In this document: positions 49,453-56,488 of the stretch, one piece after another
How the letters are laid out: the number at the start of each line of letters is the position of its first letter
How positions within the stretch are numbered: the first letter of the stretch is position 1
Assembly: GCA_904063045.1 (NCBI GenBank)
Contig: CAJFCJ010000025.1
Location: 310,001 to 374,000, forward strand
Reading direction: 5' to 3'
Source: Dimorphilus gyrociliatus
Lineage: Eukaryota > Animalia > Annelida
Length of the DNA stretch: 64,000 nucleotides
Made by a program: the position numbers and the translations under genes
The notes under the pieces: model-generated
The model's input: only the letters and a program-made list of their open reading frames with translations
Database searches by the model: none
Told to the model about the DNA's origin: nothing

Positions 49453-52118
49453 CTATGCTACAGGCTCGATTAAAATGGGTAAACCATTTAATGATTTCAG
49501 AGTAATTTGCATGCTAGGTTTAGGCTTAAATCCCTCAACCTCTTTTAGAACGAAATTTTTCAAAATTATTGCTATTGTTGCTTTCATCTCATTTAGAGCG
49601 AAATTTTGTCCAATACAATTTCTGAAAGAGTATCGTAAAGGGAAAACATAAAAACGTATTTCATTTAATTATATATAATAACCTTGGTCCAGCCGAAAAT
49701 GGTACGAATGAAAAAGCATCTTTGTCTCCCTTTTTAGCATGTCTTTCAGGATCAAACTTTCCAGGATTTTCCCAAACGTCTGGATCTCTATGCAAGCAAT
49801 ATATCGACAAGAAAATTGCTACTCCTGTGTTCATTTAAATCAATTAGTTTACAGCCATTTCGAGTAACAAAAAAAAAAGAGAAACAAGTTCTACCTTTTT
49901 CTAGTCTCATTCCATTTGACAAAACTCTTTCTTCAGTAATTTCTCTTTGTATACTTGGTACTGGTGGACTAACTCGAAGACTTTCTTTCAAAGTTTTTGT
50001 CAGATACGTCAATTTTGATAAATCATTCCTGTCGACGAATTTTTATTATACACTTGGAATATACACATTTCGGCACGGCACATTTCAGTAACCGTTTCGA
50101 ATAGATGCATACATTAGCCGCAATAAATATTGTATATATATACTGTATATATAATCATTTAAGTAATGTACAGCATATCGAGATGCTATTAATAGAATAC
50201 AACAATATACTATGAAGAGGAGAAAGGCAAGATATAGCCACCAATTTGGATGATGAGTTATCATGACCTTTTCGGCGTCGTCAATAGTTTTATAACATAA
50301 ATTATAACAAACGTTTATTCTCTTCCTACTTTCTCTATTTCGCTTGAATTGCTAATTTGAAATGGATTTTTAGGGACGTCGGCTTTCCTTTACGTTCTCC
50401 TTCTCCATAGATTTTACTGGATAAAATGCTTACCAGGAAACGGTATCGGATTCTCCTAAAACTTCCATTACTTCCTCTCTACATTTCTCTTGAATTTCCG
50501 GGTATTTTGCCAGATTATAGAGGGCAAATGAAATTCCTGCAGCGGTAGTATCGTGACCTTCAAACATAAACGTGTCCACTTCATCAGCAATCTCCTGGTC
50601 GCTGAGACCTTTTCCGTTTTCGTCCTAAGCGAATTCCCATGATAATTAAAACTCATAACACAACAAGAAAAGGAAATTGTTTCAATTTCACGTCAAAGGC
50701 GATAATCTAAAAACTTTCTTACCCTTGCCGAAAGGAGAATATCGATAAAATCCAAATATCTTCTATGTTTCGTATAATCCTTTAATGTTTCAAATATCAA
50801 ATAAAATTATTGGAAAGCGAATACGTTTGTTTGAAATTGATCATCGTACCGGTTTTGCTTTCAATAGCGCCTGTCTTTCTTTTATAACTTTTCTGGTAAA
50901 TGAATGCAGTTTATGTATATTATACAAATAGCTCCAGCTATTTGGTGTCAAATAATAAATGAAAGGAGATAATAGAATTGGATTAACAAATCTTTGAATT
51001 AGCAGATATGTTACTCTTTGTACGGCTTGTAAATAAGGATGCTCTACTCTGTTTGCATAAAAAATAGTACATAAGATTGATTATATTACTATTTATACAC
51101 ATTTAAATATTATTTACTTTTCATTTTGGCACTCTGTATGTAAACCGAATATACACTTTAGAAGAGAATCCAAAGTCATTAAACTTATATCATCGTGCAA
51201 TTCTATTTGATTGCCATCTCCATTTTCTAGACGCGCTTGCCACTTTGCCTGAATATTCAAACAATATTTTTAGGTTATGATATATGGTTGCGTTTGCATT
51301 AAAAGAAAAATACTAACTACTAGTGCATTGGCACAATCGGAATATAATTTAGTATACGGCTTCAGAATATCAAAGTGGAAAGCGGGCGTTAATAATCTTC
51401 TATTCCTAAACCATTTTGGACCATAGCTTAAAAGTAAACCATCTCCGAGCCATAATTTTAAAAAGCTATAGCCGAAGCTATCTTTTGGTTCTGATAAAAT
51501 ACAGTATAATGTAATAAATTTAAACAAAAATTAGCTATATAAATTGATGATTTAATTAAAAAGAAGTGTTGTTTTCAATTTACCAGCAGTATTAAGTATT
51601 TCCTTGGCGTATTTTACTTTTGTTATAAACATTCTCTCAATAACTGGGCCAGTTTTTCCTTTCCATAAACCGTTAAATTCTTCGCTCATCTTTTCCATAG
51701 TTTGAAAAACTGTCTCTCTATTAAAAAACTGAAAGGTAGAAAAATTTATAAAGATTATGGAAAGAAAGAGAAAATGAAAGAGTTTTCAACTTACGTGATG
51801 CGCTTCACCATAGAACCAATGGCTTGATGGCTTAGGGAGGTCTTTGAGTGCTCGATTCATTTTTCGCCTATAAAGTATTATGGAATACATCTTTTGACCA
51901 GAAACTAGAACAAGGTAAATCCCAAAAGACGCTCCTATTATTTTCCAAGTCTTGCGATCCTATAGATGTAAATTCATAATTAAACATTTGTACTATTAGT
52001 ATAGAAATTATTCGTTTTTTCAAATGCTCACTTTAATAGTATCAAGTAGGGAATTTGTTTGGAAATATTCAATTATCTTATCGAGTCCATTTCTGCCAGT
52101 TTCTATTAAGCTTTCCAT
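49453..52118 (-). CDS. CYP4: Cytochrome P450, CYP4 clan (paralogue A), 11 exons
   Basis: MESLIETGR...; [30 protein letters not shown]; MTLDSLLKC; I-helix [13 protein letters not shown]; K-helix KESLR; FDPERH; haem motif FSAGPRNCIG; TAG at 49453-49455. All GT-AG. Confidence 0.95.
49926..50931 (-). repeat. 1006-bp inverted repeat, copy A (inside CYP4 A)
   Basis: Compared base by base with the reverse complement of 55011-56016: no indels, one mismatch (50816/55126, intronic). Confidence 0.97.
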
Positions 52119-53857: not shown

Positions 53858-56488
53858 ATGGGTGGAATATGTCGAGCTACTGAAGCTCTATTAGAAAAGC
53901 TATATAATCTGTTGGGAAAAGAGAAGGATCTTCTTAAGCTTCTAAAGGTAAATAAGCTTACAATTCTTTTACTACTTATGCTATATACTTTTGCAAATTT
54001 CTCAGAGTAAAGAGGCTCTAAAACTTCTTGGTAGTGCCCTTGGGATTTATATTGTAGCAAAATCTGCACATCATCTCTACTCTTTATTTCTTTGGCGTAG
54101 ACAAACAACGAAAGCATTGTCGCAATATCCCACCCCACCCCGACATTGGCTTTATGGACACGCTCTTTACGTAAGCTATTCATAGTGTAGTATATTCATA
54201 AGATAGTTTAATTCCCAAAAATTATTCAGTTTAAAGATCGCTCTAAAGCTTTCGAAACCATTCAAAAATTTAGTAAGGATTACAACGGTGCATGGATAAA
54301 TTCCATCGGACCATTTAGCGACCGATTGATAATTACAAAAGTAAAATACGCCAAAGATATTCTATCTACAGCAGGTAACACAATTAAAGAGTAACATGAT
54401 AAATATGTACCTAATTTGAAAGTATATTTATTAAGAACCGAAAGAACCTTACTCTTATGGCTTTCTAAAACTCTGGTTAGGAGATGGTCTCCTACTCAGT
54501 TCAGGACCTAAATGGTTTAGAAGTAGAAGACTCTTGACACCAGCGTTTCATTTTGATATTCTGAAACCTTATTCTAAATTGTTTTCGGATTGCGCTAATA
54601 CGTTGATTGTAAGTATTCGTATTATCTTTCACTACTATCTGTAACATGCATGCATTGATTTACATATACTTTTTATTTATCTATATAAATTTATATATAG
54701 AACAAATGGAAAGACAAATTAGCACACAAGGAAAATATGGATATTGAACTCTACAATGAAATTAGTCTGCTAACACTTGACGACCTTTTAAAATGTATCT
54801 TTGGTCAAGAAAGCAACTGTCAAACATCTAGGTTAACTAAACTAATTATTGTTTCTGAAAAGAGCATATTAAAATATTTAATTTCAATTTCAGCAACTCT
54901 CATCCCTACTTAGAGGCTGTTCAAAATGTAACTCGTTTACTTATGCAAAGAGCGCTTAATGTATTGAATTTAATTACATTTATATACTATCTAACACCGA
55001 CAAGTTGGTACTATTTGTATAATATACATAAACTGCATTCATTTACCAGAAAAGTTATAAAAGAAAGACAGGCGCTATTGAAAGCAAAACCGGTACGATG
55101 ATCAATTTCAAACAAACGTATTCGCATTCCAATAATTTTATTTGATATTTGAAACATTAAAGGATTATACGAAACATAGAAGATATTTGGATTTTATCGA
55201 TATTCTCCTTTCGGCAAGGGTAAGAAAGTTTTTAGATTATCGCCTTTGACGTGAAATTGAAACAATTTCCTTTTCTTGTTGTGTTATGAGTTTTAATTAT
55301 CATGGGAATTCGCTTAGGACGAAAACGGAAAAGGTCTCAGCGACCAGGAGATTGCTGATGAAGTGGACACGTTTATGTTTGAAGGTCACGATACTACCGC
55401 TGCAGGAATTTCATTTGCCCTCTATAATCTGGCAAAATACCCGGAAATTCAAGAGAAATGTAGAGAGGAAGTAATGGAAGTTTTAGGAGAATCCGATACC
55501 GTTTCCTGGTAAGCATTTTATCCAGTAAAATCTATGGAGAAGGAGAACGTAAAGGAAAGCCGACGTCCCTAAAAATCCATTTCAAATTAGCAATTCAAGC
55601 GAAATAGAGAAAGTAGGAAGAGAATAAACGTTTGTTATAATTTATGTTATAAAACTATTGACGACGCCGAAAAGGTCATGATAACTCATCATCCAAATTG
55701 GTGGCTATATCTTGCCTTTCTCCTCTTCATAGTATATTGTTGTATTCTATTAATAGCATCTCGATATGCTGTACATTACTTAAATGATTATATATACAGT
55801 ATATATATACAATATTTATTGCGGCTAATGTATGCATCTATTCGAAACGGTTACTGAAATGTGCCGTGCCGAAATGTGTATATTCCAAGTGTATAATAAA
55901 AATTCGTCGACAGGAATGATTTATCAAAATTGACGTATCTGACAAAAACTTTGAAAGAAAGTCTTCGAGTTAGTCCACCAGTACCAAGTATACAAAGAGA
56001 AATTACTGAAGAAAGAACACTTTGTGATGGACGAAGATTACCAAAAGGTAACGTCCAAGTTTCTCGTCTTTTTTAAAAATATTTAAATTCTGTTCTAATC
56101 AGGCGTTGCTGTCGTTCTTTCAATTTATGCTATTCATCATGATCCGGATGTTTGGGAAAACCCTGATAAGTTTGATCCTGAAAGGCACTCGATTAGAGGG
56201 GAGAGAGACCCTTTCGCCTTCGTTCCGTTTTCGGCTGGACCAAGGTCTTTTTCTTACATAATTTAAAGACTTTCTAAAGGTTATGAATTAAATCAAATTT
56301 TTTTTTCATATTTCAGGAACTGTATAGGGCAAAATTTTGCCCTCAACGAAATGAAAGCGACAGTAGCAATTGTCTTAAAACATTTTTTTTTATCTGAAAT
56401 TAAGGGTTTCAAAGCTCAGCCCGTAGGACAAGTAACAATAAAATCTCTGAATGGATTATGGGTTAATCTTCGACCTTTGAAGGAGTAG
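53858..56488 (+). CDS. CYP4: Cytochrome P450, CYP4 clan (paralogue B), 11 exons, head-to-head with A
   Basis: MGGICRATE...; [30 protein letters not shown]; [13 protein letters not shown]; KESLR; FDPERH; FSAGPRNCIG; TAG at 56486-56488. Same intron positions as A. Confidence 0.95.
55011..56016 (+). repeat. 1006-bp inverted repeat, copy B (inside CYP4 B)
   Basis: 1005/1006 identical to the reverse complement of 49926-50931. Confidence 0.97.

What the first reader, a model, noticed from the sequence alone, without database searches (positions are those of the whole stretch)
50932..55010. Potential invertible 4.08-kb cassette: one crossover in the repeats would swap P450 C-termini and give four in-frame enzymes from two genes
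Seen: the 4079 bp between the inverted repeats contain both start codons (52118 and 53858), the 1.74-kb shared upstream region and exons 1-5 plus the start of exon 6 of both genes. The 3' exons (PERF-region exon, haem-Cys exon, 3'UTR) lie outside. Established: crossover between inverted repeats inverts the intervening DNA, as in flip-flop inversion polymorphisms. Inference: because the repeat is the same reading frame in both genes, the flipped isomer would encode full-length A(N)-B(C) and B(N)-A(C) chimeras, a simple recombinational way to vary a detoxification or lipid-metabolising P450. The present arrangement might itself be one isomer. No recombinase is seen, so homologous recombination would be needed.
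Basis: inference. Interest (0 to 1): 0.75.

Follow-up and report, generated by a model that had tools for sequence, protein, structure and literature searches.

The report
Gene-conversion island in head-to-head P450 genes
Two old, back-to-back cytochrome P450 genes of the tiny marine worm Dimorphilus gyrociliatus share a practically identical 1-kb block, introns included. It is best read as gene conversion, a known process; the block could in principle let the 4-kb piece between its copies flip, but nothing here shows that it does.

Summary
Window 49926-50931 (- strand) and 55011-56016 (+ strand) form a 1006-bp inverted repeat with one mismatch. They enclose 4079 bp that hold both start codons, a 1739-bp single-copy intergenic region, and exons 1-5 plus the first 117 nt of exon 6 of both genes.

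The genes are intact, 11-exon, divergently transcribed CYP4-family P450s of the annelid Dimorphilus gyrociliatus (DgyrCDS13415 and DgyrCDS13416). This is not human DNA.

Outside the repeat they are old paralogues: 53% (N part) and 66% (C part) amino-acid identity, saturated synonymous sites, unalignable introns. Inside it, three introns and 433 coding bases are identical. That marks an in-register interlocus gene-conversion tract, or an island of concerted evolution. It is not selection, a transposon or a fold-back misassembly.

Both genes enter the repeat in codon phase 2, so one crossover would give two full-length in-frame chimeras. No evidence of inversion exists. The assembly holds only these two copies in one arrangement, and no chimeric protein is on record. 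The protein record is weak evidence, because only this one assembly's annotation covers the species. No read-level test was possible.

Both the mechanism and the inversion potential are known kinds (CYP1A1/CYP1A2; human inversions mediated by inverted repeats). The scan noted similar conversion tracts elsewhere in this genome.

The parts
49453..52118 (-). Gene A, CYP4-family P450 (DgyrCDS13415, CAD5125172.1). Eleven exons: 52118-52032, 51959-51795, 51728-51584, 51490-51318, 51248-51118, 51048-50850, 50779-50723, 50624-50434, 50028-49895, 49824-49683, 49621-49453.
   Evidence: Exact splice mapping of P0063 onto the window, all introns GT-AG. Pfam PF00067 at 367.6 bits. Exon 1 and the first 99 nt of exon 2 are my extension, by in-frame homology to gene B's annotated N-terminus.
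53858..56488 (+). Gene B, CYP4-family P450 (DgyrCDS13416, CAD5125173.1, 532 aa). Eleven exons: 53858-53947, 54006-54170, 54230-54374, 54436-54608, 54701-54831, 54894-55092, 55163-55219, 55318-55508, 55914-56047, 56103-56244, 56317-56488.
   Evidence: Exact splice mapping of P0209. Pfam PF00067 at 359.5 bits. Full-length match to rabbit CYP4B1 structure 5T6Q, E 4e-126.
49926..50931 (-). Repeat arm in gene A: last 82 nt of exon 6, intron 6, exon 7, intron 7, exon 8 (I-helix), intron 8, and the first 103 nt of exon 9.
   Evidence: 1005/1006 identical to the reverse complement of 55011-56016.
55011..56016 (+). Repeat arm in gene B, covering the same exon and intron content.
   Evidence: Codes residues 274-418 of B and 273-417 of A; the 143 whole codons between these two boundary codons are 100% identical.
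50932..55010 (.). The 4079-bp segment that a crossover between the arms would invert. It holds both 5' gene halves and the intergenic region.
52119..53857 (.). 1739-bp intergenic region between the two start codons. It is presumably a bidirectional promoter region. It is single-copy and contains no transposon.
   Evidence: The whole-assembly search finds only itself plus one 30-nt match. No ORF with a Pfam match lies inside it.
55126..55126 (+). The only mismatch between the arms (partner position 50816). It lies in intron 6, 115 nt from the inner edge.

Best explanation
The repeat is an island of concerted evolution. One or more interlocus (ectopic) gene-conversion events between two ancient, divergently transcribed CYP4 paralogues copied about 1 kb from one gene, in register, onto the homologous stretch of the other. 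The stretch runs from mid exon 6 to mid exon 9 and takes in introns 6-8. Because the genes lie head to head, the converted tract appears as an inverted repeat around their 5' halves. Shown: the sharp borders; identity of introns and synonymous sites; equal exon sizes and phases; saturated divergence outside the tract; only two copies in the genome. Inferred: the mechanism (homologous repair between the two copies, probably repeated, since the present flanks are too diverged to start it easily), its direction, and its age. As a by-product the arms now form a competent substrate for non-allelic homologous recombination. A crossover would invert the 4079 bp between them and swap the C-terminal roughly 113 residues of the two enzymes. 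That is a possible rare mutation or polymorphism, not a demonstrated or programmed switch.
For: The arms match at 1005/1006, ungapped and in register, with identity falling to about 50-57% directly outside. The tract contains 573 nt of intron, which is identical, while all other introns are unalignable and differ in length. Outside the tract, amino-acid identity is 52.6% (N part) and 66.4% (C part), with pS 0.75-0.84, which is saturated. Both genes are intact, all introns are GT-AG, and exon sizes are identical for exons 2-10. The 77.9-Mb assembly has no third copy and no transposon-like spread; the next-best matches are exon-only at 76-77%. The intergenic spacer is unique. Both annotated proteins match the reference linkage. 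There is precedent for gene conversion between head-to-head P450 paralogues in CYP1A1/CYP1A2 (PMC3199271).
Against: No orthologous gene pair from a second species was available, so the classical quartet test for conversion could not be run. The direction and number of events are unknown. The flanks next to the tract are now only about 55% identical, so a single recent event between such diverged sequences would be hard to start. This favours a long-maintained island, but I cannot show that. The assembly pipeline (PBcR self-correction, Quiver, Pilon on pooled worms; PMC7854359) could have smoothed a few real differences between the arms. The 99.9% figure is therefore an upper bound, and the tract may be older than it looks. 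No GC-bias signature was seen in the tract (GC3 0.29, as in the flanks).
Confidence: 0.85

Rival explanations
1. One reading: the 4.08-kb cassette really exists in both orientations in worms or tissues (a flip-flop inversion through crossover in the arms). The locus would then yield four P450 proteins, perhaps to the animal's advantage.
For: All geometric requirements are met: 1006-bp arms at 99.9%, a 4-kb spacer, the same codon phase, and intact genes. The conversion tract itself shows that the two arms meet in recombination, and some such events resolve as crossovers (established knowledge). In humans, inversions mediated by inverted repeats recur and can swap exons between inverted paralogues, for example AQP12A/AQP12B; one breakpoint was placed in a 782-bp block of 99.9% identity (PMC3961182).
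Against: There is no observation of the second orientation. The assembly has one arrangement and no alternative haplotig. The 90%-identity clusters of both proteins have one member each, and no chimeric protein appears among the hits. That protein check is weak evidence, because only this one assembly's annotation represents the species. Crossovers between 1-kb repeats are rare per generation (my knowledge). Nothing indicates selection for switching, and no recombinase is present.
Confidence: 0.1
2. Assembly or consensus artefact: the tract, or its near-perfect identity, was produced by read correction, polishing or haplotype merging.
For: The assembly came from pooled animals and used PBcR self-correction, Quiver, Pilon and HaploMerger2. 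These steps can erase small differences between similar repeats. Earlier scan notes report other tracts of about 1 kb at 99.9% in this assembly.
Against: Each arm has unique, collinear gene flanks on both sides, and both genes keep intact reading frames. PacBio reads selected at 5 kb or more span 1 kb easily. No pipeline step can turn unalignable introns into identical ones with base-sharp borders inside exons. A fold-back artefact would make the whole locus palindromic, and it is not.
Confidence: 0.04
3. The block is identical because of strong purifying selection, or because a mobile element or third donor copy inserted into both genes.
For: The tract encodes the most conserved P450 core (I-helix, K-helix). 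Exon 8 is 94% identical in protein even to a relative from another species.
Against: Selection does not keep 573 nt of intron and every synonymous site identical while neighbouring exons are saturated. The genome has no further copy. The block replaces homologous exons exactly in register.
Confidence: 0.01

Closest known systems
CYP1A1/CYP1A2 of amniotes (head-to-head P450 paralogues with a shared promoter region and documented gene conversion; PMC3199271)
   Same: Two divergently transcribed P450 paralogues share an upstream region. Conversion homogenised bounded parts of the coding sequence while the rest diverged.
   Different: This pair belongs to the CYP4 family and to an annelid, and the spacer is 1.7 kb where CYP1A1/CYP1A2 has 23 kb. 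The tract is essentially fresh (1 difference in 1006) and includes three introns. The primate CYP1A conversion is ancient and was inferred from trees.
[quoted passage not shown] HsInv0241, which exchanges exon 1 of AQP12A and AQP12B (PMC3961182)
   Same: Inverted paralogous gene segments flank a short spacer. A crossover swaps gene parts without loss of DNA, and breakpoints fall in the most identical stretch.
   Different: In those cases both orientations were genotyped in people. Here only one orientation is known. The arms are short (1 kb) and lie wholly inside the genes, so a flip would create protein chimeras.
Chimeric P450 CYP337B3 of Helicoverpa armigera, made by unequal crossing-over between CYP337B1 and CYP337B2 (PMC6211633)
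   Same: Recombination between neighbouring P450 paralogues yields an in-frame chimera with a new combination of substrate-binding parts.
   Different: In Helicoverpa the repeats are direct, so the outcome is a deletion or fusion, and the chimera is observed and functional. Here the chimeras are hypothetical and would arise by inversion without any change in copy number.
Arm-to-arm gene conversion in sex-chromosome palindromes (PMC8981503)
   Same: Inverted arms around a spacer are kept above 99% identical by intrachromosomal conversion.
   Different: Those arms are tens to hundreds of kilobases long and hold whole genes. Here the arm is a 1-kb internal piece of two otherwise old and different genes. 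No GC bias was seen.

Membership tests
Cytochrome P450, CYP4 family | Full-length match to the P450 profile (PF00067) | tested here: met
   A scores 367.6 bits and B 359.5 bits against a cut-off of 22.8. The single exons are collinear with the profile.
Cytochrome P450, CYP4 family | Haem-binding loop FxxGxRxCxG with the axial Cys, and the ExxR motif of the K-helix | tested here: met
   Both are present in both proteins (translations). The loop is split between exons 10 and 11.
Cytochrome P450, CYP4 family | CYP4-type I-helix with the conserved Glu (EGHDTT) | tested here: met
   It is present in exon 8 of both genes and aligns with the same motif of CYP4B1.
Cytochrome P450, CYP4 family | At least 40% identity to named CYP4 members (nomenclature rule; my knowledge) | tested here: met
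   Identity is 43-47% over 98-100% of the length to proteins named CYP4B1/4F/4T8-like. The best solved structure is CYP4B1, E 4e-126; the next family, CYP3A, is at 1e-45.
Interlocus gene-conversion tract between paralogues | A sharply bounded block of near-identity inside otherwise diverged paralogues, in register | tested here: met
   1005/1006 ungapped; the flanks fall to 50-57% within 60 nt. Exon sizes are equal.
Interlocus gene-conversion tract between paralogues | Identity extends to neutral sites (introns, synonymous positions) | tested here: met
   Introns 6, 7 and 8 (70, 98 and 405 nt) are identical but for one base. pS is 0 in the tract and 0.75-0.84 outside it.
Interlocus gene-conversion tract between paralogues | Not a dispersed repeat or a third-party insertion | tested here: met
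   The assembly holds only two copies.
Interlocus gene-conversion tract between paralogues | Tree switch in a two-species quartet (paralogues group within the species in the tract, and by gene outside it) | not testable with these tools
   The only relative found (L008, Logan run SRR23372228) is a single copy equidistant from A and B. No orthologous pair was available.
Inversion polymorphism by NAHR between inverted repeats (flip-flop) | High-identity inverted repeats flank the segment | tested here: met
Inversion polymorphism by NAHR between inverted repeats (flip-flop) | Both orientations observed (reads, assemblies, individuals or species) | not testable with these tools
   No reads can be reached. 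There is a single arrangement and no alternative haplotig in the assembly.
Inversion polymorphism by NAHR between inverted repeats (flip-flop) | Chimeric A/B products on record | tested here: inconclusive
   None appears among the hits to gene A, and the 90% clusters of A and B have one member each. However, only one assembly's annotation covers this species, and short-read contigs cannot bridge 433 identical coding bases.
Programmed site-specific DNA inversion switch (invertase or tyrosine-recombinase systems) | A dedicated recombinase gene and short specific crossover sites | tested here: not met
   The locus has no recombinase-like ORF. The neighbour is an F-box/WD40 gene, and the nearest transposase is a Tc1-like element about 34 kb away. 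The arms are ordinary gene sequence.

The most novel reading that the evidence does not exclude
The cassette really toggles in D. gyrociliatus populations or tissues. The locus would then exist as two isomers encoding four CYP4 enzymes that recombine the N-terminal substrate-recognition regions of one gene with the C-terminal region and haem loop of the other. The conversion island would be kept because it preserves this switch.
Probability: 0.07. Interest if true: 0.6.

Novelty: new member of a known kind. Interest (0 to 1): 0.3.

Why it matters
This is a very clean example of how gene conversion keeps the catalytic core of two old detoxification-type enzymes identical while their substrate-facing ends diverge. 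Such a tract also creates a latent inversion substrate inside genes. If long reads from the pooled worms showed both orientations, it would be a rare case of an inversion that reshuffles protein halves with no gain or loss of DNA. As it stands, it adds one more instance of local conversion between neighbouring paralogues in a compact annelid genome. It also corrects the N-terminus of one gene model.

Tried and rejected
1. A word search with the exon-4 ORF of gene A found only fragments at 76% identity or less, none from this species.

2. The Logan contig L008 (SRR23372228) carries a related CYP4 gene. I hoped it would be an orthologue for a linkage or direction test. It is equidistant from A and B (exon 4: 84% vs 88% amino-acid identity; exon 5: 65% vs 61%), and it stops before exon 9, so it was no use.

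3. P0212, a 526-aa transcript-like protein from Logan, is the orthologue of the contig-14 paralogue, not of A or B.

4. An exact look-up of gene B's protein in other assemblies found nothing on record.

5. The contig-14 CYP4 cluster was checked for similar tracts; it has none at 90% or above.

6. GC-biased conversion: GC3 is the same in the tract and the flanks, so there is no support.

7. A non-coding RNA in the unusually long intron 8: there are no Rfam matches above noise and no internal repeats.

I redid the step by mapping the database proteins onto the window by coordinates.

Exons were searched by reference, and the annotated proteins P0063 and P0209 served for full-length searches. Joined coding sequences were built only inside local scripts, for the identity and pS counts.
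Full report
**Source**

The window is contig C25:310001-374000 of a 77.9-Mb, 349-contig, AT-rich assembly (GC about 0.25-0.33).

An earlier scan note named the species as Dimorphilus gyrociliatus. I verified this. The two genes' products are exact database entries, DgyrCDS13415 (P0063, CAD5125172.1) and DgyrCDS13416 (P0209, CAD5125173.1), both from D. gyrociliatus. The published assembly is about 78 Mb (PMC7854359). 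The DNA is annelid, not human.

**Observation**

The repeat finder reports an inverted pair of 1150 nt at 95%. A global alignment of the two gene regions and an ungapped position-by-position comparison resolve this into a core of 1006 bp: 49926-50931 against 55011-56016. The core has a single mismatch, at 55126/50816.

Directly outside the core, identity falls to about 50-57% within 60 nt.

The whole assembly holds only these two copies. The next-best matches are exon-sized pieces at 76-77% in paralogues on contig 14 and elsewhere on contig 25.

**Anatomy**

I mapped the two annotated proteins onto the window with an exact splice search. This gives two 11-exon genes with GT-AG introns throughout and identical sizes for exons 2-10 (165, 145, 173, 131, 199, 57, 191, 134, 142 nt).
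- Gene A runs on the - strand from ATG 52118 to the stop at 49453.
- Gene B runs on the + strand from ATG 53858 to the stop at 56488.
- The start codons are 1739 bp apart, and that spacer is single-copy.

The annotated model of gene A starts at an internal Met (51860). An in-frame exon 1 (52118-52032) and the rest of exon 2 (from 51959) lie upstream and align with gene B's annotated membrane-anchor region.

Both proteins are full-length P450s (PF00067 at about 360 bits). They carry the haem loop, the ExxR motif and the CYP4-type I-helix. They match rabbit CYP4B1 (5T6Q) over their whole length at E 4e-126, and they are 43-47% identical to proteins named CYP4B/4F/4T-like.

**What the repeat covers**

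The repeat starts 117 nt into exon 6 and ends 103 nt into exon 9. It contains:
- 433 coding bases (B residues 274-418);
- introns 6, 7 and 8 (70, 98 and 405 nt).

By alignment to CYP4B1 and the general P450 layout (inference), the tract spans from the end of the G-helix region through the I- and K-helices to about the strand after the K-helix. On this reading:
- substrate-recognition regions 1-3 lie in the unique N part;
- region 4 and most of region 5 lie in the tract;
- region 6 and the haem loop lie in the unique C part.

**Why gene conversion**

Outside the tract the genes are ancient paralogues:

| Part | Amino-acid identity | pS |
|---|---|---|
| N part (272 codons) | 52.6% | 0.75 |
| C part (113 codons) | 66.4% | 0.84 |

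Both pS values are saturated. The introns outside the tract are unalignable and differ in length.

Inside the tract, every synonymous site and all but one of 573 intron bases are the same. Purifying selection cannot do that. A transposon or third donor is excluded by the copy count and by the exact in-register replacement. A fold-back misassembly would make the whole locus palindromic, and it is not.

A non-reciprocal, homology-guided copy between the two genes is the explanation that fits. Two successive inversions would exchange the segments but would not make them identical (reasoning). So inversion alone cannot explain the repeat.

The sequence next to the tract is now only about 55% identical. 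I therefore think it more likely that the island has been re-converted repeatedly since the duplication than that one recent event struck two fully diverged genes. This is inference.

One difference in 1006 bp implies a very recent last event. However, the assembly pipeline (PBcR self-correction, Quiver, Pilon, HaploMerger2 on pooled females) may have erased a few true differences. The age is therefore a lower bound.

Earlier notes of this scan describe similar conversion tracts of about 0.8-1.4 kb between neighbouring paralogues elsewhere in this genome. I did not re-test those. The CYP4 cluster on contig 14 shows no such tract.

**The inversion idea**

Both genes enter the tract at coding offset 821 (B) and 818 (A), so both are in phase 2. 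A single crossover within the arms would invert 50932-55010 and produce two intact chimeric genes, A(N)-B(C) and B(N)-A(C).

Each chimera would keep its own promoter side and take on the other gene's last roughly 113 residues, which are 66% identical between the genes.

The kind of event is well known. In humans, inversions mediated by inverted repeats recur. One of them exchanges exon 1 of AQP12A and AQP12B, and a 782-bp stretch of 99.9% identity was proposed as a breakpoint (PMC3961182).

Evidence is what is missing:
- The assembly has one arrangement and no alternative haplotig.
- The 90% clusters of both proteins have a single member, and no chimera appears among the hits. This search has little power, because only one assembly's annotation represents the species.
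- No other record encodes gene B's product.
- The one related contig found (L008) cannot assign linkage.
- Short-read contigs could not bridge the tract in any case.
- No recombinase lies nearby. The neighbour is an F-box/WD40 gene at 57250-58445, and the nearest transposase ORF, which an earlier scan note calls a Tc1-like element, is about 34 kb away.

I put the chance that both orientations exist at detectable frequency at roughly one in ten. The chance of a selected 'diversity switch' is a few per cent.

**Comparison and verdict**

The closest known cases are listed here.
- CYP1A1/CYP1A2: head-to-head P450s with a shared promoter and gene conversion (PMC3199271).
- Human NAHR inversions between inverted paralogues (PMC3961182).
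- The chimeric CYP337B3, made by unequal crossing-over (PMC6211633).
- Palindrome arm-to-arm conversion (PMC8981503).

The finding is real and tidy, and it belongs to a known kind. The decisive test is to count arm-spanning PacBio reads of PRJEB37657 in the four linkage classes. That is straightforward but lay outside these tools.

**Procedural notes**

Exons were searched by reference, and the database proteins P0063 and P0209 were used for full-length searches.

Noticed in passing
window 51861-52118 (- strand): The public model of gene A (DgyrCDS13415, 468 aa) starts at an internal Met. An in-frame exon 1 (52118-52032) and 99 more nt of exon 2 (51959-51861) encode a membrane-anchor-like N-terminus that aligns with gene B's. 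The model is probably truncated by 62 residues.
   Followed up: partly
window 55509-55913 and 50029-50433 (intron 8 of both genes): Intron 8 is 405 nt long. That is four to seven times longer than the other nine introns (55-98 nt), and it is somewhat GC-richer (0.33 against 0.17-0.31). It is single-copy apart from the two arms, and it has no Rfam match above noise and no internal repeats.
   Followed up: partly
L008 (Logan contig of run SRR23372228; the same ORF is also in SRR31984834): An unnamed public read set contains a CYP4 gene with the same intron positions. It is 69% identical in DNA over exons 4-8 and 94% identical in exon-8 protein. It probably comes from a related dinophilid-like annelid, and it is equidistant from genes A and B.
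   Followed up: partly
G000:C14:129300-137800 (L009, L010): This is a tandem CYP4 cluster (DgyrCDS9678/9679) of two full copies and one partial copy. Its tblastn matches are much longer, which suggests far fewer introns than the 11-exon pair studied here. The 707-aa model DgyrCDS9679 looks like a fusion of one and a half copies. There are no self-matches at 90% or above.
   Followed up: partly
window 57250-58445 (- strand): An F-box plus WD40-repeat gene lies tail-to-tail with gene B, about 760 bp beyond B's stop codon.
   Followed up: partly
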